A DNA stretch of 63,585 nt, the filler included, from Bigelowiella natans CCMP2755 (lineage: Eukaryota > Protista > Cercozoa): NCBI GenBank assembly GCA_000320545.1. It is 6 parts of 6 records of this genome, joined end to end, with 100 filler letters (N's around TTAATTAATTAA, not from the genome) between each part and the next. Parts side by side here need not be neighbours in the genome. Positions count along the whole stretch, not along the records: positions 1 to 14,140 come from ADNK01002189.1; 5 more parts are not named here. One strand, given 5' to 3'. The notes under the pieces were generated by a model. That model saw only the letters and a list, made by a program, of their open reading frames with translations, was not told the DNA's origin and made no database searches. The position numbers were made by a program, and so were the translations under genes. Shown here in pieces: positions 1-14,140 of this stretch; positions within the stretch are counted from its first letter, which is position 1; each line of letters begins with the position of its first letter.

Positions 1-240
1 CCCCCCCCTCCCCTAAAAAACACACAGCACACACACACACACACACAGATGCACCGCGTACATTTTCATCATAAAACCCGACGAACACTTAGCTAATGAC
101 AAACCGATCCATTTTTCAATATATTCTAAGGATCGCATAATCGAAGCGAAAACTGAAGTGCTACTACCAACAACTTAACACATAAAGGCTCTCATCGGAT
201 AGAAAGATATGATCCCCAAAAGGGATTTTGTTATTCTCAC

Positions 241-555
241 TGGCTGCCTCCGTCCCGGCCTGCCATTGCCAGATTCGCGGCTTCTAGGTCCCACAAAAGT
301 CCTCATAGGGGTAAGATTCTGCAGAAGGCGCACTCTCGGCTGCTTAGACCTACTTGGGTGCTGAGGCGAAGATGTCCCCCCCCCGCCTCTGGGGCTCATC
401 CTAGTAACCCTACTACCCCTCCCAGCATCTCCACTTAGAAGATCGCTTCTATCCTCTGCCACTATGGCCATCGTGATGAAGACGCTCAGGGCTAACACGC
501 TAGCCACGCCCCTCAGCATGCACCTGAGCCGGTGGGTGGGGAAGGGTAGAGCCAT
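241..555 (-). CDS. First exon of a hypothetical protein with signal-peptide plus transit-peptide-like leader (gene continues towards or past the window start)
   Basis: ATG at 555: MALPFPTHRLRCMLRGVASVLALSVFITMAIVA has a hydrophobic core, followed by an R/S/G/P-rich segment. It ends at a GTGAGA donor at ~240 and lies head-to-head with the ROCO gene. Confidence 0.45.
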
Positions 556-1221
556 TCCGAAGAGGCCGCAGCCTTGCCCTCGATTTTCTTTAATAAAGTC
601 AACAATTTTGTCACGTCTTTGGGTAAAAATGCCTTGTATTTGACGAATTTGTACTTGATGTCGCAGGAAAGATTGATAGGTCATTCAAGGGCAAGCCCGG
701 TATTTTTTTTATTGGCCGTTCTAGTCCCCGGTGGTAACCATGTAATTTTGTATTTGCTCAAAATTGCTCGACATATTATTGAGGAGAAAACCATGCCATT
801 TTCACATAACGATTATCAATCCAGGGCGCATGTGCTAGTGTGATGCGCCGCTCACAATTGCATAAATACAAACGAATTCTGGAAATGACGCCCATTTGTA
901 AAAATACATGTACCCAGTTCATGCTAGAAACATCCAAGATATTTCTCCCAGTACATGTAGTCCGGCCAGATCAAACCTGAAGCCGTGGAAATTAGACATT
1001 ACAAGCAGCCAGCACCCAGCAATTTCAGGCGTGCGACAAGGAACAAGGAATATCCTGGGAGAATCTTCTGTATTTCCTTAGACCAAATAACCGAATGTTT
1101 CGTAGGGGATTTTGGTGGATCGACAAGGTGCCGATAACCAATATCTACGAAATACTCGCATCGTGTAGTGCACTGACAGCTGCCATGCCTCGAACCAAAT
1201 GAAGAAGGAAGAAGAGGAAGA

Positions 1222-1342
1222 ATGGGCGCAGTGGTAAATATCAACAAACAAAGGTAAATTAGCATTGTTGATTTTTTAAGAAACCTAGACACAAGGCAAC
1301 AGTAGCAGCAGCTATTCCTTTATATAAATGACACACACATAC

Positions 1343-1380
<38 letters not shown>

Positions 1381-4300
1381 TCACACATTCACACATTCAC
1401 ACATTCACACACATTTCACCATATAAACAACCAATCAGTAGCAAGACAGTCTGGGAAGCTTTGGAAAGGAATGACATTGTTGCACTGAAGCGTTTGATTG
1501 AGGAAAAAGCAGACATTGAACAGAGGGATGCTGCGGGTAAATTTAGTGGGAAAGGACAGCATTATCGAGACTTCAGGCGACGAAAGATTTTGGAAAGGGA
1601 TAGCAAGAGGATTTTTGGGGAAATAGGCATGGGACTGCCATGAAGAGAAGGAAATTTCACTAAAAAGGCTGGTGTGATGGTTTCAGGGAGGCTCATGATG
1701 CGAGTTTATGAAATACTAATAAAATGGTGCTTTCCTATCATTCCTGCATTGATTTTTGGGGTATTCGTTCTAATGCACGATTGTTACACCGTTAATATCC
1801 TAGGTGAAACCCCTTTGATTTTGGCTTTGAGAAACGGACATGAAAGCATCGTCAAGCATCTGGTTGACGCAAAGGCGAATATCGAGGCAAAGGATAGATA
1901 TGGTTATTATGAATATTCGAGTTTTGCTAGCGTAAGGGAAGAGACGGACAACACCGAACCAAGAAAATGCCAAATTAATCGGTAATAGTTCCTATCTTTA
2001 TTTGTCGCACGCAATAGAATTTTGTGGTGGTGTTCGCTCTAATGCACGATTGTTACACCGTTGGTATCCTAGGTCGTACCCCTTTGATTTTGGCTTCATA
2101 TTATGGACGTGAAAGCATCGTCAAGCATCTGGTTGACGCAAAAGCGAATATCGAGGCAAAGGATAAACATGGTAAGTATGAATATTCGAGTTTTGCTAGC
2201 ATGAGGAAGGGAAGAAAAACACGAACAAGAAATGCCAATGATCGGAATAGTTCTATCTTCATTGTCGCCACATTGGATTTTGTGGTGGTGTGCGTTCTAA
2301 TGCACGATTGAGACACCGTTGGTATCCTAGGTCGTACCCCTTTGTTTTGGGCTTCGAGAATCGGAAATGAAAGCATCGTCAAGCATCTGGTTGACGCAAA
2401 GGCGAATATCGAGGCAAAGGATAGATATGGTAAGTATGAATATTCGAGTTTTGCTAGCATGAGGAAGGGAAGAAAAACACGAACAAGAAATGCCAATGAT
2501 CGGAATAGTTCTATCTTCATTGTCGCCACATTGGATTTTGTGGTGGTGTGCGTTCTAATGCACGATTGAGACACCGTTGGTATCCTAGGTCGTACCCCTT
2601 TGTTTTGGGCTTCGAGAATCGGAAATGAAAGCATCGTCAAGCATCTGGTTGACGCAAAGGCGAATATCGAAGCAAAGAATAATGATGGTAAGCATGAATA
2701 TTGGAGTTTTGCTAGCATAAGGAAGAGAAGAACAACACGAACAAGAAAATGCCAATGATCGGAATAGTTCTATCTTTATTGTCGCCGCATTGAATATTGT
2801 GGTGGTGTTCGTTCTAATGCACGATTGTTACACCGTTGGTATCCTAGGTCGTACCCCTTTGATTTGGGCTTCGAGAAACAGATATGAAAGCATCGTCAAG
2901 CATCTGGTTGACGCAAAGGCAAATATTGAGGCAAAGGATAGATATGGTAAGCATGAATATTCGAGTTTTGCTAGCATAAGGAAGAGAAGAACAACACGAA
3001 CAAGAAATGCCAATGATCGGAATAGTTCTATTTTATTGTCGCCGCATTGGATTTTGTGGTGGTGTGCGTTCTAATGCACGATTGTTATACCGTTGGTATC
3101 CTAGGTCGTACCCCTTTGATTTTGGCTTCATATTATGGACGTGAAAGCATCGTCAAGCATCTGGTTGACGCAAAAGCGAATATCGAGGCAAAGGATAGAT
3201 ATGGTAAGTATGAATATTCGAGTTTTGCTAGCGTAAGGAAGAGAAGAACAACACGAACAAGAAAATGCCAATGATCGGAATGGTTCTATCTTCATTGTTG
3301 CCATATTGAATTTTGTGGTGGTATGGAAGCATAATTGATGAGCCTGAAGGGAAATCTCATAATGTATCTGATGGGAGAAACGACGTAATATAACATCGAT
3401 GACCATGGTGGTTAGAATGATGACCAAATGAAGAACAGAAGGCCCATTTATAATTCTCTTTGTGACAGGCTTGACACCGTTGACCATAGGGGGATATGGA
3501 AGGATTGTCCAGCTGTTGGAAGGCGCGAAAAGAAGCCGCAACGTATATTTTAAGAATTATTTGGTGTTAGATGCATGCTGTTATTTAGCTATCATAGAGG
3601 AGGATGAAATAACTGAACCCTCTCAGATACATGATGAAACCAAGTTACACTGTGTATGCAAATATTGCTGATCCGATGCGAAGCATAATTGTTTTGCATT
3701 TTTCTTTTTTCCCCTACTCGCATCCCTTTCTTACGCCTGTATGCAACATTCGGTTTTGTGTGTGCTAAGAATGTCAACGCTCCCCTCTCCAACGAGGCTA
3801 TTAAACGGCTCTTCTCTAGAACGACGCCGTGGCGGCGGTCTCGCGTGATGATAGTTGGTAAAGAACACACTGGTAAAACGACGCTTTACATGGCTTTGAA
3901 AGGTGAAGAATTTCGCGACGTCGAATCAACGGTAATCCTACATCATAGACACAGAATATAATCATCATTAAAACAATATTCCATTTGTAATATACGGGTT
4001 CTTTCTCTTGTCACTATCTTATGAAGGTCGTGGCAGACGTTACCGTGCATGACGTCACTGTGGAAACAACAGATGCAGATCTAATCGGGGAAAACATAAC
4101 AGAAACAGTTTTCAAGCCCGTCGAACTCGGTAAGAGCTATGCAAGTGGAAGCTGTAATTCTTTAGTCCCAGTTTTCCTCATTATGGATTATTGTAATTTT
4201 TGTTTGTATAGGAGGTAATCATGAGAGGGCACTGGCATTGGCATACATAAAGGAGAAAGAAGAAGAAACAAAAAAGAAGAAGGAAGATGATCAACAGGAG

Positions 4301-4831
4301 GTGAAGGCAGATCCAATTTGTGTGAGTTCTGTCTGATGAAATTACTTATAGTATTAGTGAGGCATGATTGTGCACGGTAATGGTCATTGCGATGTATGTC
4401 TTACTACCCTCTCAGTTTCGTCCAAGTGATGAGAAGGAAGTGAATCCTTCCAGGAACGAGAAGAATGCGACAATAAACACGCATAAAGTAGCAATGGAGG
4501 AAGATACCACAGATTCTACAAAGGAAAGTGCAGCCGAGTATTCTTCTGCTGTTTTTGATGATTCAAAGGGGACCAATGCGAACGATGCCAGTGAAGCTGC
4601 CACAGAATCTAAGAGAGATCACAAACGCGGTGAAATAGACGAGGAATTGCTCCTAAAGGTACCAAACAGGTCTTGATTATAAGGCAGTTTTAGTAACAAC
4701 GAATTCCGTTAATATCTGCGCTATTTTGCTGATCCTGGGAAAAACTATTAGGAACTGAAGCCCGGGCGTTTGCAGGAATCATTTGATAATCCAGAAGCTA
4801 TACGAGTATATCTATGTGTGAATGTGTGAAT

Positions 4832-4872
<41 letters not shown>

Positions 4873-6880
4873 TGTGTGCGTGCGTGTGCCCACGAATGTT
4901 TGCGTTGTAGTTTTACGTTTGCCTCCTATGAATTTGTAGGTATCAGTCTGGGATTTTGCCGGACAAGAGGTGTTCTATACATCGCACGTAATGTTTCTCA
5001 ACCGCAACTGCCTTTACATGGTGGTGTTTTCCCTGGAGGAGTTCCTCGGAAGAGAAGCCGATGCTACGGGTATTATTTCGTATAGTATCTAATTAGAGAG
5101 CGAGGAAGTCAAACGCTACAATAGGGTTTGGGTGTATATTTGGATATTATTATGGTGTTCGGCATAATTGTGTAGAGGACAAACCATGGAAGAACTTACA
5201 CATTGTGTAATAAGCAGGTAACGTAGCAGCCAATCAAAGAGAGAGCGCAGAAGAATATCTCAGATTCTGGCTTCAAAACATCCGCACGTTTGCTCCTGGG
5301 GCGCCAATAGTGCTCGTAGGAACGAAGATCGATAAACTTAAAGAATACGATAACCCAGAGGTGACACTCGTACCACCACCACAGACACACTAGCAAGCAA
5401 AGTATTACACTCATACGTCCCGTCACTAACGTGTTTATATGATCTGGAAAAAGGAGCTCTTAGATGCACTCGAAGGCATCGATGAACATATCACGAGAAT
5501 AGCGAGAGAGGTATTTTATTATCCACAACATTTTGACATGTGAATAGGAGAAATCCATATTTGTGTGTGTGTGTATTTGTGTGCGTTCATGTTTCAGGTG
5601 TTTGAGGGGTGTGAGTCCTTTCCTTGGTCCCGATGTAAACAATGGCGCCCGAAAGAGGGTTCAGAACCAGCAGATCTGGTTTTCTTCCCTGCTGACAGCA
5701 AGTAGAGACTGTATATTACTATCTAGTCGATGATCGGCTATCTTTAGTATCTTGATTTAACCTTTTATCGGTTTCTACTATTCATCTCCAAAATCATTTT
5801 CATCATCATAAGGTTTCGATCGGGTGATGGGAAAGAAGTTCATGGCACGATTAAAGAGCTGCGCAACGAGGTGCTGAAGAAGCTTAAGAGCGATCCAAAG
5901 GTACCATGATATTATAATGGTGGTGTTATACCTATAACCTCTTTGTCCAATAATATACCAGGCAAATGAGGAAGTTCCATCCGAGTGGACCAAAGTATGC
6001 GACGATTTGATCGCCACAGAAAAGGCTGTATTTACCTTGAAAACGGCCAAAGAGATATGCCTCAGGCGTGGAATCGTGGATGAAAGGGAAGTACGATTGA
6101 TGTTGCAAAAGTAAGTTGCAGAATCAAGTATTATTGTACAATATCAGTCAATTTAGCATTCTGAATATTTCAATACTACTTAGGTATCACGAGCTAGGAT
6201 TAGCGATCTACTTCGACGAAGAGGATCTGCGAGATGTGAGTATTCCAATCTTCTCCATAATCTACTTGAAGCTTGCCTGAGGAATGCATTCGTCGACAGC
6301 ACATCGTTATGCGACCACAACACCTGATTGATCTGGTGAAGAAGCTCATATTTGATCGTCGCTCACATCGCAAATTATACAAGGATCAAAAGCTGTAATA
6401 CACTTACAACATATTCATGTTTATATGTTACTGCTTTATTTTCAACATGATTGTACATGATATATTCTCAAACGAATTTAGGGTTGCCAAGCATGGAGAG
6501 AAAGTCGAAGAGTAAGTAGAGCAATCTCCCACTTTCATCATCTTTTTAATAAGTTAAATCCAAAGATTATAGAAGCAAAATGGTCTGGAATGTAATGGTC
6601 TATATGTATGAACAGTTGTACGCTAAATCTCAGTGGGATGTGTGATAATTCTGTCGTATTTAGGTTTCTTGACATCGGAATTATACACAATGTAGTGTTG
6701 AGACACCTAATGCTCACTCATAATAGCAAAGAATGCCACATCGAAGCAGCAGACGATAAGGAGCGGCTGTATGTGTTCAGTCGCAAGATATTGCAGAAGT
6801 AGTTCATTTTATTTTAAATGCGAAGTTGAGAGGATTAGGGTTGGGAGCTTGCTATCTTGCTATTCCTCTCATCTTGTAGT

Positions 6881-6926
<46 letters not shown>

Positions 6927-8691
6927 GCTAGTAGATGATTTTCTCTAATTTCTTTCTACATATTTTCCCCATTTGCTGCTAAACAGGTTTATGATACTTT
7001 GTGAGATCGGTGGAACAGAGAAGTATTTAGTGCCTTCAATGATGCAAATCAAGGAAGAAGGCATGGATCAAAAGGAGCATTCAGTTGTCGCAATGTTTTC
7101 CTTGCACTTCAATCGCCTCAGGCCCCGTTCATATTTTGAGACCTTTTCCGGGAATATTGGTAGCGACAAATGATTGTTTTAATTACCATGCCAAGTTCAA
7201 TTCGTTACGAAAGACTGTAATTCACAATCTCTGAATTCAATATTCGAAAACTGTATGTCCATATTATTTAGCTCATTTTGTCTTTCTCTCTCAATTCTCT
7301 GCTTGTCCCTCCTTAATTTCTATCATATGTGCGTATTTTGCCGCATATGCATGACAGCCACGAAGCTCTCATCCGATGGCAAGTTTTCCAGGGAACTTCG
7401 GAGAGGTGATCAGATCAATGATTCTGTCTAGAAAAGAGATAAGAATAATCATTATGTTGGAGAAATCAATAATAATTATGGTTTGTTTTTTGTGTTCAGG
7501 AGCTACGAACCCAATGATCTTAGAGGAACAGGTACATCACAGTTATCTTAATATCATCATATTTGCAAGGACTTTCTCAATTATTTACACATCAGACTTT
7601 CGGGAAAGGAGAGGCAGAAATATATCTGGAGCCCTTACGTTTCCGGATTAGTACCTCAATGCTAGAGAAGAAAAAAGGGTCCTCAAGAAATAACACCTCC
7701 CATTCCCATAAAATAGCACCTTCACAACCATACAATGTACGATGTATGTTCTCGGTAGGAGGAGGTCAAAGCATGTAATGGCAATAAATGTCGAAGTTTT
7801 GTCGGAAATTGGACACTGTGCGAGGTGCGTAATGATATTACATTAGTGCCTCTTGTGAATATGGAACGTAACACGCAAGATAGCAGATCCACAGCAAGCT
7901 TTATCCAATAGGATATTAAAATTCATTCTGGAGATCGCCAGAAGTGTCCACAAGTGGCCGTACAAAAACAATGAAGCCTTGGATTTCAACGTTCTTCTTT
8001 TCGATCGGTATATGCCTGCATGATTATGTCAAAATATTTTAGAATAACATCATCTGTAGCAGTCGTAATAGTAGTAGTAGTAGTTGTAGTATCCGTATTG
8101 CAGCTAGAGCCGAGATATCGGTTTCCTACAATGAGTTGCTTACTTAATCAGAGCATCTTATCCATATATTCGCAGTACGATGACGTATCCCGTGAAGTAT
8201 GAAAAATGGGAAAAAGCCTGCAAGGAAAAGAAAACCAAAGTTATCTCTGAAAGAACCTCCGAAACAGCCTCCAAAATGGTCGAAATGACCCATCTCCGGT
8301 ATTGGGAGCAGTTCTACGATCTTTTCTTCGAAAACTCAACACTACGGTAGCTTCTTGATGTGTAGAATGTAAAATTGATTAAATTAATGAATTAGAACAT
8401 ATGGGAAATTGGATCAACAAAGATTACACCGACTTGACGTTAAATACAACAGTGTCCATTCTCCATCATTATGATGACTTCCTTGTTATTCGGTTGCAGT
8501 TACACATTTACCCAACGATGTGAATCCTCATCGCAAGACTTTGGCAACGATAACAACAAGAAGTTCATCAAATTGACGATCGTAACGCAAATATTTAAGG
8601 TGTCTGGATATATGATGCATGTTAAGAGCATGAAAGAGGATGTACACGACTGTATACGTAACGTTGAGAGAATAAGAGCTTCAAACATTTA

Positions 8692-8728
<37 letters not shown>

Positions 8729-11345
8729 CATAGTACATATACATACACATAACGAGAGAGGGGGAAGAAGCCAGGAGAGAATACAGATTCTATATTTCAC
8801 AGTTATTGTATCCTTCGGAAAGCGTTAAGTGCACAAGCCTGCGTATGAAGAGTCTATCTCCTGCAGCTATTACAAGTGGAAGAATCACTTTCGAAGAGTA
8901 CGTTCAAGTTTTGATTAATGTCTTGCATACACACATATCCTACCATCTGTGTAAGTATATCGATATTATATTTCATCCAACATAATCGTTGGTTATTATC
9001 CTACCCAGGTTTATTAATTTAATGTGGGTGGAGCGGGGACTTCAGTTTCGTAACGCTAAAAACGCCAATGATTTTGAAGCGAAATTGGAAGCTTGGGTGA
9101 AACCGCTCATAAATACTAAGGTACAAATCGGTACGCTGAAACGTATAAAATTTTTGGCAAGATTAAACACACTCACACATACATACGAGAGAAAGAGAGG
9201 AAGAGAGAGGGGGGTGGGGGGGGAGTGAGAAAAGAGGGAGGGGGGGTGAAAGAGGAGGTTGGCTATCGTCTCCAACTTTCCTTTTTCACTTTCTTTTCTA
9301 CGCTGATTTAGCATTTCAATCTCTATTCTTTCCAGGAATTACCTGCGCACTTGGCATTTGCATTTGCTTTGCCGTTGGACAAACCGAAGTCCATGCTGGA
9401 TTTAGAGAAAGATCTCAGAATGTTGCAAGATATGAGCAAATTCAATTGCACAGAGTATGAAGACGGTACTGTTGTCAAACGAAGCAAGCTTCACATATCC
9501 AAATGGAGAGCTACTAAAGAAAATATCTCTAGAGCTCTTCAATCGAAATGTTTCGCATTACTAGTGGGTTCTCATTGCAGAGAACAACTTGGCCTCAAGT
9601 TGGAAGCTGACCACCCTCTAGGAAAGACAACTTACCTCGAGTTCGAATCCGACAATCCTGGAGGAAAGGCAGTATACGTGAGCCCTGATGAGTTTTCCCA
9701 ATTGATTATGGAGACGAAAGAAACTCCAAAGATGTGCTCTTTGAAAGTATTGATGCTGGCTTCATGCGGGAGCGAAGCTGTAGCTAAAAGATTCGTTGAT
9801 TCGAAAGTAGTCGATCACATAATAGTTTGTAATAAAAACAAATTACTGGGCAATGAAGCTGTGCAGATATTTCAAACGGTCTTTTTCGAGAAATTGCTGG
9901 GCGGGGCTACAGTTTCTACCTCATTCAAATCTGCCAAGCAAAAGCTAAAAGATATGGCCAGCGTCCTCAAAAAAGAGGCTGCTGATTTGATTAAAAAGGC
10001 TGATAATCTTGAGGAGAAGTCCATAAGAGTCAAAGAATTTCGCAGTGAGTATGATAAATGCAAAAGTCGGGCAAAAATGTTGACTAAAAGGGCAGAACAG
10101 CTTAATGAGGAGGTTGACGAGTGCCTTCTGCTGCCTAAAGATGGGAATCATGATATCGCTTTCTCATTTAAACCTTATTCCCCCCCCACCGCGAAAATCA
10201 AGACATGGCATCCTGCTCCCCCAAATAATTTTTATCCAGAACATTTCTGCGAGTAGCTTAAGTGGGGAATTGACCACTATTTGAAACTTCAACGGAATCT
10301 ATACTCGGCTCTACAATGTGATGATAAAAACTCAATCCGTCATCGTTGGGTGCAAATCACAGGACCTAAGAATATAGGAAAGACTTCAGTAGCTAAGTTC
10401 ATTGCCTGGCGTCTAAGTCTCTACGATACAGAAGGACCTGATGGCATCTTTTGGGTAGGGATACCATGTACTCACGCACAAAATTTAACTTCTGCTGAAA
10501 GTGTTTTCTGCATGGCTTAGGTTACTGAGGTAAAGAGTGGAGACGAAGTGATGCAAAAATTCATGAGAAATTTCATCGAGGATGAGTCTTTTCGCACGGA
10601 AAATGTTCAGAATTGTGATCCTTATGGATTGATCAAGGGATTCTTTACGGAAAAAGCTAATCCTCCGACACTCTTGGTGCTTATGCTATTACTTCCCAAA
10701 TTTTGAGACATTCTTATGCAACCATTTTCATGTACCCAGATAATCGATGACGTAGAAGGCGTGAAAGCCGAGGATCGCGAGAAACTCTTCAAGAATCTCA
10801 TGAACCTCAACCCAAGACTACACATTCTCACAACATCTTTGACTCCGATCGAAGTGAAGGGCTTCGACTCCAATGTGCAGTTTGGGTGTTTGTTTGCTGT
10901 ACACATGCATGTGATTCGATATTGAGTTTAGTGTAGTAATCAAATTCATTCTTCAACAGAAAAAAGACCTGAAGTTGGAAGTATTGCCCAAGATCAAGTT
11001 TAAGAATTTTTTCAAGGAACGAGTTTGTGACTTCAAAGATCCAAAATTTGAGACTTTGGTTTGGGAAAACATCCAGCTTTACCATTTTACAAAACTGGAG
11101 GGTACATGTGCATCTTTTCATGCTTGATTAAATTTGTGTTGATCTCGTTGTGCTATGATGCACTGTGTCACATTTCAGCTGCAATCACGAATGTCAACAT
11201 GAATCCCCGGACTGCAATCCTTCTCGTGCGGAAAATCCATGAAATGAGCTCCGATGTGGACAAGTACAATGAGATCAACAAAATCAAAGACAGATCTTTT
11301 CTAGTCACAGTCTACAACGAATTGGTCAAAGAGAAAGCTATTTAG
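1222..11345 (+). CDS. Multi-exon ROCO-family protein: ankyrin repeats - Roc GTPase - COR - CHAT (caspase-like) domain - STAND/NB-ARC-like NTPase, with an in-frame TAG at 10254-10256
   Basis: Exon 1 is 1222-1253 (MGAVVNINKQ) and exon 2 is 1439-1536, followed by six ankyrin exons. Roc motifs: G1 MIVGKEHTGKTT (~3848-3883), G3 SVWDFAGQEVFY (exon from 4940), G4 IVLVGTKID (~5305-5335). COR motifs: VPSEW, YHELGLAIYF, IVMRPQHL, KYLVPSMM. CHAT exon from 9336 with LLVGSHC and LMLASCGS. STAND motifs: Walker A GPKNIGKTS (10362), Walker B PTLL|IIDDVE, sensor-like ILTTS. Terminal stop at 11343-11345. Confidence 0.85.
1765..3320 (+). repeat. Tandem array of six intron+exon units (~258-bp period), each with one 99-nt ankyrin-repeat exon
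   Basis: Exons at 1804-1902, 2073-2171, 2331-2429, 2589-2687, 2848-2946 and 3105-3203. All follow an ATCCTAG acceptor and end in G|GT (phase 1-1). The intervening introns are near-identical, and 2172-2330 equals 2430-2588. Confidence 0.97.
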
Positions 11346-11890
11346 AATGTCTAGTCTTCCAAATATAGGCATGCATGCTTCTCTCAAATTTTCAATTTGA
11401 TGAAGCGCATCATTCACCAGAATGGATAGGCACATTTTAGACATTGCGTATGCATTTGTCTCAAACACGCAGTTCTTCACCTACATGTAGCAAGCTGAAG
11501 CTGCGCGCATGATCATGCGTGCAGGCGCATCACCTTGCAAAACAAGTACTAGTGTGACCTAAAAACATTTCATTTTCACAATCACAATTTTCTTCGATGC
11601 ATACATGCTAGCATGATTAGCATGTCATCTAGTCATGACCAGCTAGCTCATTGGCGTGCTTGCTTATATGCTTGCTCACCGAGGATGCATGCACATGCAT
11701 GATGGATGCCAAATGCCAAATCTCTTGCATCCATTGGCGCACATGCACTGAGTCAAAACGTCTGCCGAAATTCCCACATTTCGCACAATCTGGTAGTAGC
11801 TAGGTCGCAATTTTAGGTGAATGATCACAAGTTCTCTTCATTGCATGCCAGCTAGCTAGTGTGGTGGATGATGTTGCCAACGCGCTGGGG

Positions 11891-12756
11891 CTAAATCCAT
11901 TGCGAAGACATGCGCGTCCTGCGAGAATCATCACCAGACAACGACGGATACGCCTCCACGATGGCCGGGAGCACATCTGCCTCGAGGTGATCGACAACGC
12001 TGTTTTCCGGGTTCACCAGTATCAATCCACACCCTCTCAAGGAACTGTGCCGTTTGCTTCTCGGCTCTTTCTGACTCCCGCTGGTACCGGGCTCATCTCC
12101 ACCACTGCTATTCTCCTCAGGAATTCTTCCAACAATATCCAGTTCTATCTCGTATATTGTATTACCTAACAGGCACCGTTTTAAAGCACTCTTCGCTTTG
12201 ATCAAAGCCCTGCTTTTCTTCGTCACCGCTTCCGATATGTTGTCGCGGAGGAGAGGGTACCAGAGAATGTGTGTGCCCTGTTGGAATGCCTTTGTGGCGT
12301 CGAACAAGCCTTGAACTATCATCTGGTATTCCGAAGGGTGCTCGTAAGGCGGGTCTATCAAGCACATCGTAAGCTCCCCGCTCCCAGAGGCAGCAGCCAC
12401 CCGTTTCTTTCTTTCCTCAGCTGATTTGCAATGCCATGCTATGTTTCGATTCAATCCAGTCCAACATTACACCAAAAACACTTCTATCTGAAAAATGATT
12501 GGGTTGTTTGACGTGAGATCTTACCCTCTTTCCGCAAGAACTGAAAACCACACTGGGGCTGGATTTGGACATTTTGATGATCCGGAAATATATCTTTGGA
12601 GTTTTCGCGGAGAGTCTCAACATCCGACGGGTGCAATTCGCAAAGGACGACACGGGAGTCTTTGCTCAGATAAGGGGCAACGTAAGCTGGTGATCCTGGA
12701 TACCTGCATCATTCGTGCGCCATCCCATCGAAATCTGTTTGCATCATGTGTGCAGA

Positions 12757-12804
<48 letters not shown>

Positions 12805-13138
12805 GGGGGCTGTGTTACCAACGCGTCGCAGAGGTCTCCACATTGTATGACTGGATACATTCCAAGTAGGGGCGCAGTGCTGCAGCGTTGGCTGTTCTGC
12901 GAAACGCGGGAGAAGCCAGCAGCTGCGCGATCCCCGTCTTGTGCTCGTTCCGCTTCCGTGCTTGCTCGGATGTCAAGTCGTACAGCCCAATGCCCGCATG
13001 GGTTTCAACATAAGAGAGTGGCGTTCTCTCAGCCTTCGCCCGAGCTGAAAGGCGACCTGCCACAGTCGTAACGACGACGTGCTTCAGCACGTCGGCGATG
13101 TTGCCTGCATGGAACGCATGCCGATAGGACAGCACCAT
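11891..13138 (-). CDS. rlmJ: RlmJ-like 23S rRNA m6A methyltransferase, 3 exons (13138-12819, 12703-12525, 12420-11891)
   Basis: MVLSYRHAFHAGNIADVLKH, YVETHAGIGLYDL, WYPGSP, LCELHP, LIDPPYE (catalytic DPPY), LWYPLL and GCGLILVNP match the RlmJ/YhiR family. Two GT-AG introns restore the frame. The start could be as far upstream as 13201. Confidence 0.92.
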
Positions 13139-13513
13139 TACGTCGGGTCGCAACTCACCAAGGTACGTAGATGACGACAGGGTCATTTTGATGTCGTTCA
13201 TATGTAAACGACATGTGTTTCCTCATAATCCTAAGAATCTCCCCCGAGATACGTTCGAGATCCTGAGACGGGATTGGAGCGAATCCCTGGCCTCTTACCC
13301 GTAAAACCGCTTCACGGTTGGCCAAGCATTTAGAAGGAAATGGCATGTGATCGCGACGGGAGTCATGTGGGTGAGGAGAAATCTTTGCCAAAATGGAGAC
13401 GAAGACGCCCTGGCTGGGAGTCATTCCGGGACTTTTTTTAAGCCGAAAATACCTAAATCGATGCTCGTCCAAGATCGCAACAGGTACTAGCAGTTTGCGG
13501 CTCAGAAAGCGAA

Positions 13514-13785
13514 ATGAGCGACCCCTTTGCCAAGGCCCCCGAGGGCAGCACCAAGAAGAAAGAGGCGTTGGCTTGGCGATCCAAGTTTTTGGAGATTGCC
13601 AATGAGCAGAATTATAAGTTGAAGAGTGACAAGGAAGTGGCGGAGGTGGGTTGTTTCCCCTCTCCTCTCTGGCGGAAGCATGGAAGTCGAGCACATGAAA
13701 GCTTCTTCCACCCCTTCTTCCTCACTTTCCCCCTTTCCTTTTCCCTCCACTCTCATTATTCTTTGCTGTCCGTTTCGAATCGTCT

Positions 13786-13847
<62 letters not shown>

Positions 13848-13970
13848 TCTCACAGAGAAAAAATGACAGAATGAGCAAACTAGAACTATACACGTAATCC
13901 ATAATAGGAGCTGAAGAAGAACGGATTATCTGTGCTCTATGTCACCTGGTCCGATGTCGGGAGATCTAAG
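13514..13970 (+). CDS. 5' part of a hypothetical protein, truncated by the assembly gap
   Basis: Exon 13514-13645 (MSDPFAKAPEGSTKKKEALAWRSKFLEIANEQNYKLKSDKEVAE), then a GT-AG intron containing (CT)n, then exon 13908-13970 (ELKKNGLSVLYVTWSDVGRSK) in phase 0. Confidence 0.5.
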
Positions 13971-14140
13971 GTCGTGATGAGCCTTATTCTTTTACTCTTC
14001 TTCTTCCCATTGGGATAGAGCGAGAGTCAACTTTGACTAAAATAAGAACCCCCCCATGGGAACAAAAATCCCGGACATGCATTTCTTTGCAATGTTTCCT
14101 TCCCAGGTGGGAAAAGGTGGGGAGGGTGGGGAAAAGGAAG

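What the first reader, a model, noticed from the sequence alone, without database searches (positions are those of the whole stretch)
1222..11345. Single-gene sensor-switch-protease: ANK array - Roc/COR - CHAT caspase-like protease - STAND NTPase
Seen: one exon chain carrying ankyrin repeats, the Roc G1/G3/G4 motifs, COR motifs, a CHAT-like domain with a His (GSHC, 9573) and a Cys (LASCGS, 9765) at the catalytic-dyad positions, and a STAND-type NTPase (GPKNIGKTS; LLIIDD; ILTTS; NMNP at the GxP position) with no C-terminal TPR/LRR/WD40. Established: ROCO proteins, CHAT proteases and STAND NTPases are each recurrent modules of innate immunity and cell death in prokaryotes and eukaryotes. Inference: two nucleotide switches flanking a caspase-like effector, with the sensor repeats at the N-terminus, is an inverted NLR-like design. 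I do not recognise it as a described architecture. It is the best candidate here for an undescribed protist immune or cell-death system.
Basis: partly seen in the sequence, partly recalled or inferred. Interest (0 to 1): 0.92.

Follow-up and report, generated by a model that had tools for sequence, protein, structure and literature searches.

The report
Protist ROCO–CHAT protease–NLR fusion gene
This Bigelowiella natans gene fuses ankyrin repeats, an LRRK2-type GTPase switch, a caspase-like protease and an Apaf-1/plant-NLR-type ATPase on one spliced transcript, an apparently undescribed mix of immune and cell-death modules, but a stop codon in this copy cuts off the ATPase.

Summary
The window is nuclear DNA of the chlorarachniophyte alga Bigelowiella natans. 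I built a 38-exon model, all GT..AG, from ATG 1222 to TAG 11343-11345.

- **One transcript:** spliced transcriptome contigs identical to the window join the COR exons to the protease exon. They run unbroken into the P-loop region and end in a poly(A) tail at 11419.
- **Protease:** the region called CHAT is a caspase-like (clan CD) domain. A family profile matches the solved SAVED-CHAT structure at E 5e-18. The predicted structure (pLDDT 81) best matches SAVED-CHAT, Csx29, metacaspase, MALT1 and caspase-9. The His (9573) and Cys (9765) are conserved.
- **NTPase:** it is NB-ARC-like and has no C-terminal repeats.
an in-frame TAG at 10254-10256 lies between protease and NTPase. Three paralogs have CAG there. 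This copy's open frame therefore ends after 1431 codons; 265 further codons remain open.
- **Recurrence:** Roc and CHAT exons lie in the same order at six or more loci. The protease-NTPase cassette is a family of about 30 matches.
- **Ankyrin exons:** they diverge faster than their introns, as expected of a sensor.

Any immune or cell-death role is inferred. I rate it a new variant of known kinds.

The parts
1222..11345 (+). Whole gene model: 38 exons, all introns GT..AG. The frame is open for 1431 codons, then an in-frame TAG, then 265 more open codons to the terminal TAG.
   Evidence: frame check in a local script. Boundaries of exons 18-36 come from RNA joints. Exons 1-17 and 37-38 come from open frame, GT-AG sites and exon-by-exon conservation in paralogs.
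1439..3542 (+). Ankyrin repeat array: N-cap exon 1439-1536; six 99-nt phase-1 exons at 1804-1902, 2073-2171, 2331-2429, 2589-2687, 2848-2946 and 3105-3203; C-cap exon 3469-3542.
   Evidence: Pfam Ank E 4.6e-7 and 6.4e-7; exon scan.
1747..3322 (+). Tandem array of a 258-bp unit (one 99-nt ankyrin exon plus one ~159-nt intron), 6.1 copies, 90% matches. Exons are less alike (88.8%) than introns (95.1%).
   Evidence: Tandem Repeats Finder; exon/intron identity and nonsynonymous/synonymous counts.
3770..5701 (+). Roc GTPase domain, exons 10-17. G1 at 3857-3880, G3 at 4952-4966, G4 at 5322-5333. An acidic low-complexity insert (exons 12-13, 4212-4658) lies between switch I and G3.
   Evidence: Pfam Roc 30.6 bits (cut-off 27) on 4940-5089, with weaker hits on the G1 and G4 exons. 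LRRK2 Roc is the best solved match, E 2e-6.
5813..8007 (+). COR region, exons 18-29. COR-A core is exon 19 (5962-6110) plus exon 20 (6184-6235, YHELGLAIYFDEE). A COR-B-like YLVPS motif is in exon 24 (6987-7159). Exons 27-29 are placed approximately.
   Evidence: Pfam COR-A E 0.096 on exon 19. Exon 19 matches two ROCO open frames of the same genome that reach the COR-A cut-off: BLASTP E 2e-4, hhalign E 6e-5. Joints. Exons 27 and 29 are supported by paralog conservation; exon 28 rests only on the 245-nt contig length and the depth bins.
8176..9120 (+). Four linker exons (30-33) with no recognisable family, conserved in paralogs.
   Evidence: No Pfam hit. 52-97% amino-acid identity in C2356 and C3059 (exon 31 not matched in C3059). 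Joints 8597>8801, 8897>9009 and 9118>9334.
9336..10253 (+). CHAT / caspase-like protease domain (about 9336-9920), then a long helical hairpin and a conserved strand. Catalytic-position His codon 9573-9575, Cys codon 9765-9767.
   Evidence: Profile against PDB 8tl0 SAVED-CHAT, E 4.7e-18. AlphaFold2 model pLDDT 81, pTM 0.81. Foldseek hits: SAVED-CHAT E 1e-9, Csx29, metacaspase 9, MALT1, caspase-9, legumain. The Cys is invariant and the His at least 90% conserved.
9584..9668 (+). 42-bp tandem duplication (2 copies) that inserts about 14 residues just after the His motif. The C1554 paralog shares it; more distant relatives lack it.
   Evidence: It falls in the low-confidence loop (residues 87-91) of the model.
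10254..10256 (+). In-frame TAG, codon 1432 of the model. Paralogs have CAG (Gln) here.
   Evidence: The TAG is present in RNA contigs of runs X1, X2 and X5 with no differing letters. The JGI model Bigna1/63593 ends here.
10257..11342 (+). NB-ARC-like STAND NTPase, open for 265 codons: rest of exon 34 to 10454, then exons 10521-10676, 10740-10874, 10960-11101 and 11179-11345. P-loop 10362-10388; Walker B 10671-10676 plus 10740-10751; ILTTS in exon 36; NPRTA in exon 38. No C-terminal repeats.
   Evidence: Paralogs hit Pfam NB-ARC, AAA_16 and NACHT weakly. Family profile against Apaf-1 E 0.002 and MLA13 E 0.046. The predicted structure of paralog P0004 best matches Sr35, NRC4, ZAR1, Apaf-1 and CED-4.
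11346..11419 (+). 3' untranslated region, with a poly(A) addition site at about 11419.
   Evidence: Loose end of 23 A behind 11419 in run X2; raw 3' reads of run X22.

Best explanation
This is an expressed member of a Bigelowiella natans gene subfamily. In that subfamily a caspase-like CHAT protease plus NB-ARC-type STAND NTPase cassette has gained an N-terminal ankyrin array and a Roc-COR GTPase.

Proposed mechanism (inferred from what each module does elsewhere):
1. The ankyrin array, which varies on its binding face, binds a ligand or guards a host target.
2. Roc-COR acts as a GTP-controlled dimerisation or conformation switch.
3. In intact paralogs, the NB-ARC module oligomerises on nucleotide exchange.
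4. Either step brings CHAT domains together and switches on proteolysis of an unknown substrate, giving a defence or cell-death output.

In this copy a recent CAG>TAG change stops translation after residue 1431. The main product would be ANK-Roc-COR-CHAT without the NTPase: a truncated, possibly regulatory or decaying, family member.
For: Shown:
- Domain identities.
- One spliced polyadenylated transcript.
- Single frame of 1431 codons, then TAG.
- CAG in three paralogs.
- Roc and CHAT exons in the same order and on the same strand at C1548, C3059, C2355, C2356, C3236 and C1834. C2356 and C3059 are colinear with the window exon by exon.
- At least 31 CHAT-like matches in the genome.
- The cassette is combined with other heads or tails: SAM, an MGCG lipidation motif, TPR, SH2, cold-shock-like repeats.
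- Ankyrin exons are 88.8% identical against 95.1% for their introns. There are 56 nonsynonymous and 24 synonymous codon differences. All amino-acid changes fall at repeat positions 2, 6, 7, 9-13 and 31-33. This resembles the concerted and diversifying evolution reported for fungal NLR repeats (PMC4986451).

Established knowledge used:
- Roc-COR proteins cycle between dimer and monomer with the bound nucleotide (PMC11052575).
- STAND, AP-GTPase and caspase-like modules recur in conflict systems (PMC7159879).
- CHAT proteases activate gasdermins in fungi (PMC8851545).
Against: - No functional data exist; substrate and trigger are unknown.
- The residue after the His is Cys (GSHC) rather than the Gly usual in caspase-type HG motifs. 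A copy-lineage 14-residue insertion follows it, so activity is not assured.
- The window's own exons do not reach Pfam cut-offs for CHAT or NB-ARC.
- COR-B was not verified.
- The TAG lies more than 1 kb and four introns upstream of the last exon. Such an mRNA would normally be an NMD target, yet contigs are readily assembled.
- ROCO proteins such as LRRK2 work in trafficking, not immunity.
Confidence: 0.6

Rival explanations
1. The TAG is read through or recoded at a useful rate. The full 1697-residue ANK-Roc-COR-CHAT-NB-ARC protein would then be made alongside the 1431-residue form, giving two isoforms from one mRNA.
For: - The 265 codons after the TAG stay open across four correctly spliced introns.
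- Changes on the window's branch after the TAG, polarised with C2356 as outgroup, are 4 nonsynonymous to 6 synonymous. The intact C1554 copy shows 2 to 6, so there is no visible decay.
- The base after the stop is C. From general knowledge, that is the leakiest context in eukaryotes.
- The mRNA is abundant enough to assemble in three studies.
Against: - The gene otherwise uses the standard code. There are no other in-frame TAG or TAA codons in 1696 sense codons, and its own terminator is TAG.
- No known readthrough motif follows the stop.
- A very recent mutation explains the intact downstream frame equally well; the counts are small.
Confidence: 0.12
2. This copy is simply a young transcribed pseudogene in a fast-turnover family. 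Neither the truncated nor a readthrough product has a function.
For: - The nonsense change is copy-specific against three paralogs.
- The family is large and is being reshuffled.
- The stop lies far upstream of the last exon junction.
- The current JGI model for the locus is only a 174-residue fragment.
Against: - Only one disabling change is seen in about 5.1 kb of coding sequence.
- All 37 introns keep GT..AG, and those laid with RNA are spliced.
- The upstream 1431-codon frame with an intact His/Cys dyad is complete and could work by itself.
- There is no excess of nonsynonymous change.
Confidence: 0.22
3. The ROCO part and the CHAT-NTPase part are two adjacent genes.
For: - The C1554 paralog carries the same CHAT-NTPase cassette (94% nucleotide identity) without Roc-COR and is expressed.
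- RNA depth is higher over the 3' part.
- Database gene models cover only the 3' part.
Against: - Contigs identical to the window carry the joints 8897>9009 and 9118>9334, with upstream COR exons on the same record (X5 record 13).
- The frame is continuous across these joints.
- The same exon order is conserved in C2356 and C3059.
- The extra 3' depth and the foreign upstream sequence at 9336 come from the C1554 transcript.
Confidence: 0.03
4. The protein is a housekeeping signalling or trafficking scaffold, like LRRK2, and the CHAT domain is a processing protease or an inactive adaptor. It would have nothing to do with immunity or cell death.
For: - The best-studied ROCO proteins act in membrane trafficking and cytoskeleton control.
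- The HG glycine next to the catalytic His is replaced.
- The N-terminus MGAVVN fits the loose N-myristoylation pattern, which could suggest membrane association (inference).
Against: - Housekeeping genes are not usually present as about 30 diverging, domain-shuffled paralogs restricted to one lineage. Only 21 representatives below E 1e-3 were found among 1.8 billion proteins.
- They do not usually have repeat exons that evolve faster than their introns.
- NB-ARC and CHAT partners are characteristic of conflict systems (PMC7159879, PMC8851545).
Confidence: 0.12

Closest known systems
ROCO proteins (LRRK2, LRRK1, DAPK1, MFHAS1; Dictyostelium and bacterial Roco such as Chlorobium tepidum Roco)
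   Same: A Roc GTPase is followed directly by COR, with N-terminal repeats (LRRK2 also has ANK). The G1, G3 and G4 motifs are present. LRRK2 Roc is the best solved match to the G3 exon. The COR-A motif is present.
   Different: The output domain is a caspase-like CHAT protease plus an NB-ARC NTPase, not a kinase or death domain. The Roc domain has a roughly 120-residue acidic insert. COR-B was not verified.
CHAT-domain proteases with regulatory modules: SAVED-CHAT (PDB 8tl0), Csx29 TPR-CHAT (Craspase), fungal HET-Q2-like CHAT and NLR-like proteins
   Same: The fold is caspase-hemoglobinase with a His/Cys dyad. The protease is coupled to a sensor or switch module, and in some relatives to a STAND NTPase and repeats (PMC8851545).
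   Different: The switch here is Roc-COR (plus NB-ARC in paralogs). There is no SAVED domain and no TPR in this gene. The sequence is too divergent for Pfam CHAT to score the window's own domain. The substrate is unknown and no gasdermin-like neighbour is on this 14-kb contig.
AP-ATPase / NB-ARC STAND proteins (Apaf-1, CED-4, plant CNLs such as Sr35, NRC4, ZAR1)
   Same: Walker A, Walker B (hhhhDD) and an hhTTS/R strand are present, with a following helical domain that has a GxP-like NP motif. The best structural and profile matches are to these proteins. A caspase-type protease is functionally linked, as in the Apaf-1/caspase-9 and CED-4/CED-3 pairs.
   Different: The protease is fused in cis, N-terminal to the NTPase. 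The module stops after the first helical domain: no winged-helix or HD2 domain and no WD40, LRR or TPR sensor. In this copy a stop codon separates it from the rest.
Other B. natans and chlorarachniophyte CHAT-NTPase genes (Bigna1/142209 CHAT+NB-ARC+TPR; Bigna1/89576 MGCG-CHAT-NTPase with cold-shock-like repeats; Norrisiella CHAT-NACHT-SH2; C1554 paralog)
   Same: The CHAT plus helical hairpin plus NTPase cassette is homologous: 30-96% identity.
   Different: Those genes lack Roc-COR, and several keep C-terminal sensor-type domains. The window's subfamily instead carries ANK-Roc-COR at the N-terminus and no C-terminal domain.

Membership tests
Ankyrin repeat proteins | Tandem 33-residue repeats that match the Ank profile | tested here: met
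   Pfam Ank 30.2 and 29.8 bits (cut-off 21.1) on single-repeat exons. Six 33-codon exons plus caps.
ROCO | Roc-type small GTPase domain with G1, G3 and G4 motifs | tested here: met
   Pfam Roc 30.6 bits (cut-off 27) on exon 14. G1 GKEHTGKT, G3 DFAGQ and G4 TKID are present. LRRK2 Roc E 2e-6.
ROCO | COR-A immediately C-terminal to Roc | tested here: met
   The direct Pfam hit is weak because the domain is split over four small exons (E 0.096). Exon 19 aligns to two same-genome open frames that reach the COR-A cut-off at 35.3-35.5 bits: BLASTP E 2e-4, hhalign E 5.7e-5. Exon 20 shares 12 of 18 residues with their FHDLGVAIYFDEE motif. The evidence is transitive, not a direct cut-off pass.
ROCO | COR-B (dimerisation half) | tested here: inconclusive
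   No Pfam or PDB hit for exons 23 and 24 taken singly. Only a YLVPS-type motif seen by eye. The joined sequence was not searched.
CHAT / clan CD caspase-like peptidases | Caspase-hemoglobinase fold | tested here: met
   AlphaFold2 model pLDDT 81. Foldseek: 8tl0 SAVED-CHAT E 1e-9, then Csx29, metacaspase 9, MALT1, C11, caspase-9, legumain.
CHAT / clan CD caspase-like peptidases | Catalytic His after one strand and Cys after the next strand | tested here: met
   The His (9573) is at least 90% conserved and the Cys (9765) invariant in 24 sequences. They align to the GH-G and nAC motifs of 8tl0. Caveat: the Gly after the His is replaced by Cys.
CHAT / clan CD caspase-like peptidases | Pfam CHAT (PF12770) score above the gathering cut-off | tested here: not met
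   No CHAT hit for the window's exon. Relatives pass: P0031 30.5 bits and P0008 28.3 bits (cut-off 24); P0009 passes Peptidase_C14 at 25.8 bits (cut-off 21.4). Membership therefore rests on profile and fold evidence.
STAND NTPase, NB-ARC / AP-ATPase clade | Walker A, Walker B with acidic pair, and an hhTTS/R strand | tested here: met
   GPKNIGKTS, LLIIDD and HILTTS are read directly.
STAND NTPase, NB-ARC / AP-ATPase clade | Significant profile or structural similarity to NB-ARC proteins | tested here: inconclusive
   The window's P-loop exon alone gives only nSTAND3 E 0.054. Paralogs score NB-ARC at 19 bits, under the 23.5 cut-off. The family profile hits Apaf-1 at E 0.002. The predicted structure of paralog P0004 (pLDDT 69) best matches CNL resistosomes and Apaf-1, E 2e-5 to 3e-4, with low TM-scores. 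The more distant relative P0036 scores NB-ARC at 2e-22, but on a second NTPase region. The results are consistent but were not obtained on the window's own joined sequence.
STAND NTPase, NB-ARC / AP-ATPase clade | Winged-helix/HD2 arm and C-terminal sensor repeats | tested here: not met
   The frame ends about 235 residues after the P-loop, at the same point as paralogs P0004 and P0030. No repeat follows.
Canonical NLR (effector - NOD - C-terminal repeats) | Tripartite order with repeats C-terminal to the NOD | tested here: not met
   The repeats are N-terminal and the NOD is the last domain. In this copy the NOD lies behind a stop codon.

The most novel reading that the evidence does not exclude
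Chlorarachniophyte algae may have evolved their own innate-immune or cell-death receptor repertoire around a cis-fused caspase-like protease plus NB-ARC cassette. In one subfamily an LRRK2-type Roc-COR GTPase and a hypervariable, exon-by-exon expanding ankyrin sensor were added. A GTP switch and an ATP switch would then jointly gate one protease. That logic is not known from animal, plant, fungal or bacterial NLR-like systems. The truncated copy in this window could act as a natural NTPase-less regulator or decoy.
Probability: 0.3. Interest if true: 0.8.

Novelty: new variant of a known kind. Interest (0 to 1): 0.62.

Why it matters
ROCO GTPases, caspase-like proteases and STAND NTPases are the three main nucleotide- or proteolysis-driven modules of cell-death and immune signalling. 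Here they are joined in one polypeptide, which has not been described.

- **Direct handle on coupling:** an intact paralog would show whether a Roc-COR switch can control a protease, and how two nucleotide switches are combined.
- **Unstudied lineage:** Rhizaria have essentially no studied immune-type receptors. This family gives them an expanded, fast-shuffling candidate repertoire.
- **Gene annotation:** the published B. natans models for this family are fragments. The model at this locus is 174 residues, against a 1431-codon frame here.
- **Clean case study:** the ankyrin array, one repeat per exon with exons diverging faster than introns, shows concerted plus diversifying evolution that is easy to survey among isolates.

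Tried and rejected
- **Pfam on single exons of the COR-B and linker regions:** nothing useful.
- **Pfam COR-A across the whole genome:** missed the window because the domain is split over small exons.
- **PDB sequence search with COR exon 24 and with a COR-A open frame:** nothing.
- **PADLOC on eight family members:** only one weak SAVED_CHAT hit.
- **The look-up of encoding contigs for the local JGI protein:** not on record.
- **Alternative genetic code (TAG = Gln):** rejected. The other 1696 sense codons contain no in-frame TAG or TAA, and the gene terminates on TAG.
- **An intron that removes the TAG:** rejected. RNA contigs are colinear with the genome from 9491 to 10453, and the flanking residues are conserved coding sequence in paralogs.
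- **An alternative 5' exon spliced to 9336 (loose end in X2):** rejected. It is the transcript of the C1554 paralog.
- **Exact exons between 7596 and 8176:** many GT-AG combinations fit the frame. I chose the set that fits the 245-nt contig length and the depth bins; exons 27 and 29 also show paralog conservation. Exon 28 (7759-7824) was not checked against paralogs.
- **Joined model:** the joined spliced protein was not given to any search or folding tool. Searches were done exon by exon by reference, or on database paralogs. The joined coding sequence was assembled only inside local scripts to check frame continuity.
- **Unseen joint:** one search did not list 7 of its 22 joints. My model accounts for 21 introns in that stretch, so I did not see one extra joint.

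Full report
**Source and layout.** The piece (1-14140) is contig C1548 of the 91-Mb assembly G000. A 174-residue protein identical to the translation of 9732-10253 is EukProt/JGI model Bigna1/63593 of Bigelowiella natans, a chlorarachniophyte alga in Rhizaria. The + strand from about 1200 to 11400 is about 40% G+C. It is broken into many short open segments with microsatellite-rich spacers, the look of an intron-rich nuclear gene.

**Gene model.** Two transcriptome-type runs of organism A, one of organism B and one raw RNA-seq run were laid on 5600-11500. This gave 22 joints; the 15 listed all have GT..AG ends.
- The joints chain 5701>5813 and onward through 8897>9009 and 9118>9334. The contigs are colinear with the genome from 9334 to 10453. 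Then come 10453>10520 and 10675>10739, a short loose end that fits 11101>11179, and a 23-A tail behind 11419.
- One organism-B contig (record 13, 1774 nt, no differing letters in the listed pieces) carries COR exons, linker exons and the first 187 nt of the protease exon.
- After shifting ambiguous joints to GT..AG, and using the contig's length to fix 245 nt of exon between 7596 and 8176, I obtained exons 18-36.
- Exons 1-17 and 37-38 were derived from open frames and splice sites. Exons 10, 11, 14, 15, 17 and 37-38 were then checked exon by exon against paralogs. Exons 1-9, 12, 13 and 16 rest on open frame and splice sites only.
- The model has 38 exons and starts at ATG 1222. It reads 1431 codons without a stop, then TAG at 10254-10256, then 265 further open codons to TAG 11343-11345.
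- The joined protein was not sent to any search or folding tool. All searches were by single-exon reference or on database paralogs. The joined coding sequence existed only inside local scripts for the frame check.

**Domains, N to C.**
- *Ankyrin.* Six 99-nt phase-1 exons each encode exactly one 33-residue repeat, with an N-cap and a C-cap exon. Pfam Ank gives E about 5e-7 for one repeat. The exons sit in a 258-bp exon-plus-intron tandem unit, 6.1 copies at 90%.
- *Roc.* G1 GKEHTGKT, G3 DFAGQ and G4 TKID are present. Pfam Roc is above its cut-off on the G3 exon. Human LRRK2 Roc domains are the best solved matches, followed by archaeal and bacterial Roco proteins. An acidic insert occupies exons 12-13.
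- *COR.* The domain is split into exons of 9-57 codons, so direct hits are weak (COR-A E 0.096). Two other ROCO loci of the same genome have this part in one open frame and reach the COR-A cut-off. The window's exon 19 aligns to them: BLASTP E 2e-4, profile-profile E 6e-5. Exon 20 carries their core motif almost unchanged. COR-B could not be verified.
- *Linker.* Four linker exons (8176-9120) have no recognisable family but are conserved in paralogs.

**The protease.**
- The 314-residue open segment has no Pfam CHAT hit by itself.
- An exhaustive HMMER search of 1.8 billion representatives found only 21 relatives below E 1e-3.
- The nearer relatives are B. natans or chlorarachniophyte proteins. 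Several pass Pfam CHAT or Peptidase_C14 cut-offs.
- Most of the distant relatives scanned hit Pfam CHAT. Three of them carry AAA_16 or nSTAND NTPase domains, and one of those is from the ciliate Tiarina fusa.
- The profile of that alignment hits the solved SAVED-CHAT filament protein 8tl0 at E 4.7e-18, aligning both catalytic motifs.
- The AlphaFold2 model (pLDDT 81, pTM 0.81) has an alternating strand/helix core followed by a long helical hairpin.
- Foldseek ranks SAVED-CHAT first (E 1e-9), then Csx29, metacaspase 9, MALT1, a C11 peptidase, caspase-9 and legumain. The ESM Atlas neighbours are CHAT clusters.
- The refutation test 'does not fold as a caspase-hemoglobinase domain' is therefore not met.
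- Two caveats apply. The residue after the His is Cys, not the usual Gly. A 42-bp tandem duplication (9584-9668), shared with the closest paralog, adds about 14 residues right there.

**The NTPase.**
- Walker A, Walker B, the hhTTS strand and an NP-containing helix are read directly. They align exon by exon to paralogs at 32-80% identity.
- Paralogs give sub-threshold NB-ARC, NACHT and AAA_16 hits.
- The family profile finds Apaf-1 (E 0.002) and the barley CNL MLA13.
- A moderate model of paralog P0004 (pLDDT 69) is most similar to the plant resistosomes Sr35, NRC4, NRC2/3 and ZAR1, and to Apaf-1 and CED-4.
- The module ends after the first helical domain, and no repeats follow. I call it NB-ARC-like STAND. 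The evidence comes from paralogs, not from the window's own joined sequence.

**The stop codon.**
- The window reads TTCTGCGAGTAG where paralogs C1554, C2356 and C3059 read TTCTGCGAGCAG. More distant relatives also have Gln there.
- The TAG is present in RNA contigs of three runs, with no differing letters.
- It is not a code change: no other in-frame TAG or TAA occurs, and the terminator is TAG.
- No intron removes it.
- With C2356 as outgroup, the window's branch shows 4 nonsynonymous and 6 synonymous changes in 158 post-TAG codons. The intact C1554 copy shows 2 and 6. There is no sign of decay.
- The mutation is therefore recent, or the region is still translated by readthrough. I favour a recent truncation; readthrough gets about 0.12.

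**Family context.**
- The genome has at least 31 matches to the protease domain.
- Close copies of the Roc G3 exon occur at nine loci. At six of them (C1548, C3059, C2355, C2356, C3236, C1834) a CHAT exon lies 4.5-5.5 kb downstream on the same strand.
- C2356 is colinear with window 3722-11436. C3059 is colinear with 1723-6526 and 9334-11507 at the nucleotide level, and with most of the exons in between at the protein level.
- C1554 shares 94% nucleotide identity with window 9150-11473, introns included. It lacks Roc-COR. Its transcript joins a remnant of the ankyrin-cap exon straight to the protease exon, which explains the foreign sequence at 9336 and the extra 3' depth.
- Other members combine the cassette with a SAM-like N-terminal segment (recognised by eye; Pfam reported no SAM domain), an MGCG lipidation motif, cold-shock-like repeats, TPR or SH2.
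- The cassette is thus a shuffled module, and the ROCO fusion is a recurrent, expressed architecture rather than an annotation accident.

**Ankyrin evolution.** Among repeats 2-6 the exons are 88.8% identical, while the introns between them are 95.1% identical. Codon differences are 56 nonsynonymous to 24 synonymous. Every amino-acid change lies at repeat positions 2, 6, 7, 9-13 and 31-33, and positions 14-30 are invariant. High internal repeat conservation with variability on the binding surface is what Dyrka et al. describe for fungal NLR repeats (PMC4986451). This is the best internal evidence for a recognition role.

**Mechanism (inferred).**
1. The ankyrin array binds a ligand.
2. The signal passes through Roc-COR, whose dimer/monomer state depends on the bound nucleotide (PMC11052575).
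3. In intact paralogs, NB-ARC oligomerisation would add a second nucleotide-dependent step.
4. Proximity of CHAT domains activates proteolysis of an unknown substrate.

STAND NTPases, AP-GTPases with COR, and caspase-like peptidases are recognised building blocks of conflict systems (PMC7159879). CHAT proteases activate gasdermins in fungi (PMC8851545). None of these papers, nor five literature searches, turned up a Roc-COR-CHAT-STAND fusion or any account of this B. natans family. The library is incomplete, so this is absence of evidence only.

**Verdict.** The protease and NTPase calls hold. I rate it a new variant of known kinds (ROCO and CHAT-NLR-like), of moderate to high interest. It is best pursued on the intact paralogs at C3059 and C2356.

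Noticed in passing
window 1804-3203: One ankyrin repeat per 99-nt exon. The exons of repeats 2-6 are less alike (88.8%) than the introns between them (95.1%). All amino-acid changes fall at repeat positions 2, 6, 7, 9-13 and 31-33. This suggests diversifying selection inside a concertedly evolving exon-plus-intron tandem array.
   Followed up: partly
L013 (G000:C1554) 1001-4482, minus strand: This paralog shares 94% nucleotide identity with window 9150-11473, introns included, but has no Roc-COR. A different 153-residue N-terminal open frame (3630-4091) and a remnant of the ankyrin-cap exon are spliced straight to the CHAT exon. It has CAG where the window has TAG. It is expressed: a contig of run X2 carries its upstream exon.
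   Followed up: partly
window 869-1065: This block is 84.6% identical to C1554 4290-4482. In both genes it lies 150-400 nt upstream of the start codon, so it is probably a shared promoter or 5' UTR segment.
   Followed up: no
window 11891-12454 and 12815-13201, minus strand: Two open frames match Pfam RsmJ/RlmJ rRNA methyltransferase (E 4e-12 and 1.4e-9). A convergently transcribed housekeeping gene appears to lie 3' of the finding.
   Followed up: no
P0032 (Bigna1/89576), residues about 560-1090: This family member continues after the NTPase with several repeats that look like cold-shock/OB-type motifs (…YGFIKV…DVYFDRGCCK…GDEV.V…). That would be an unusual candidate sensor for an NLR-like protein. 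Pfam gives no hit there.
   Followed up: no
P0037 (Norrisiella sphaerica MMETSP0113) and P0016: These proteins have a CHAT-NACHT/NB-ARC-SH2 architecture. A phosphotyrosine-binding domain on a protease-STAND protein in protists would suggest a link to tyrosine-kinase signalling.
   Followed up: no
window 4212-4658: A roughly 120-residue acidic, low-complexity insert lies inside the Roc domain between switch I and G3, encoded by two dedicated exons. The nucleotide alignment to C3059 runs across this region, but whether the insert itself is conserved was not checked.
   Followed up: no
G000:C3227:107785-107988 and G000:C233:9213-9413: These are further ROCO genes of B. natans in which the end of Roc and COR-A lie in one exon. 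The intron density of COR therefore differs among paralogs.
   Followed up: partly
window 7773, 8061, 8829: Loose ends of RNA contigs (up to 255 letters unlike the window) were not found in the three paralog contigs I fetched. They may be alternative isoforms or other paralogs. One of the 22 joints was not shown and is not accounted for by my model.
   Followed up: partly
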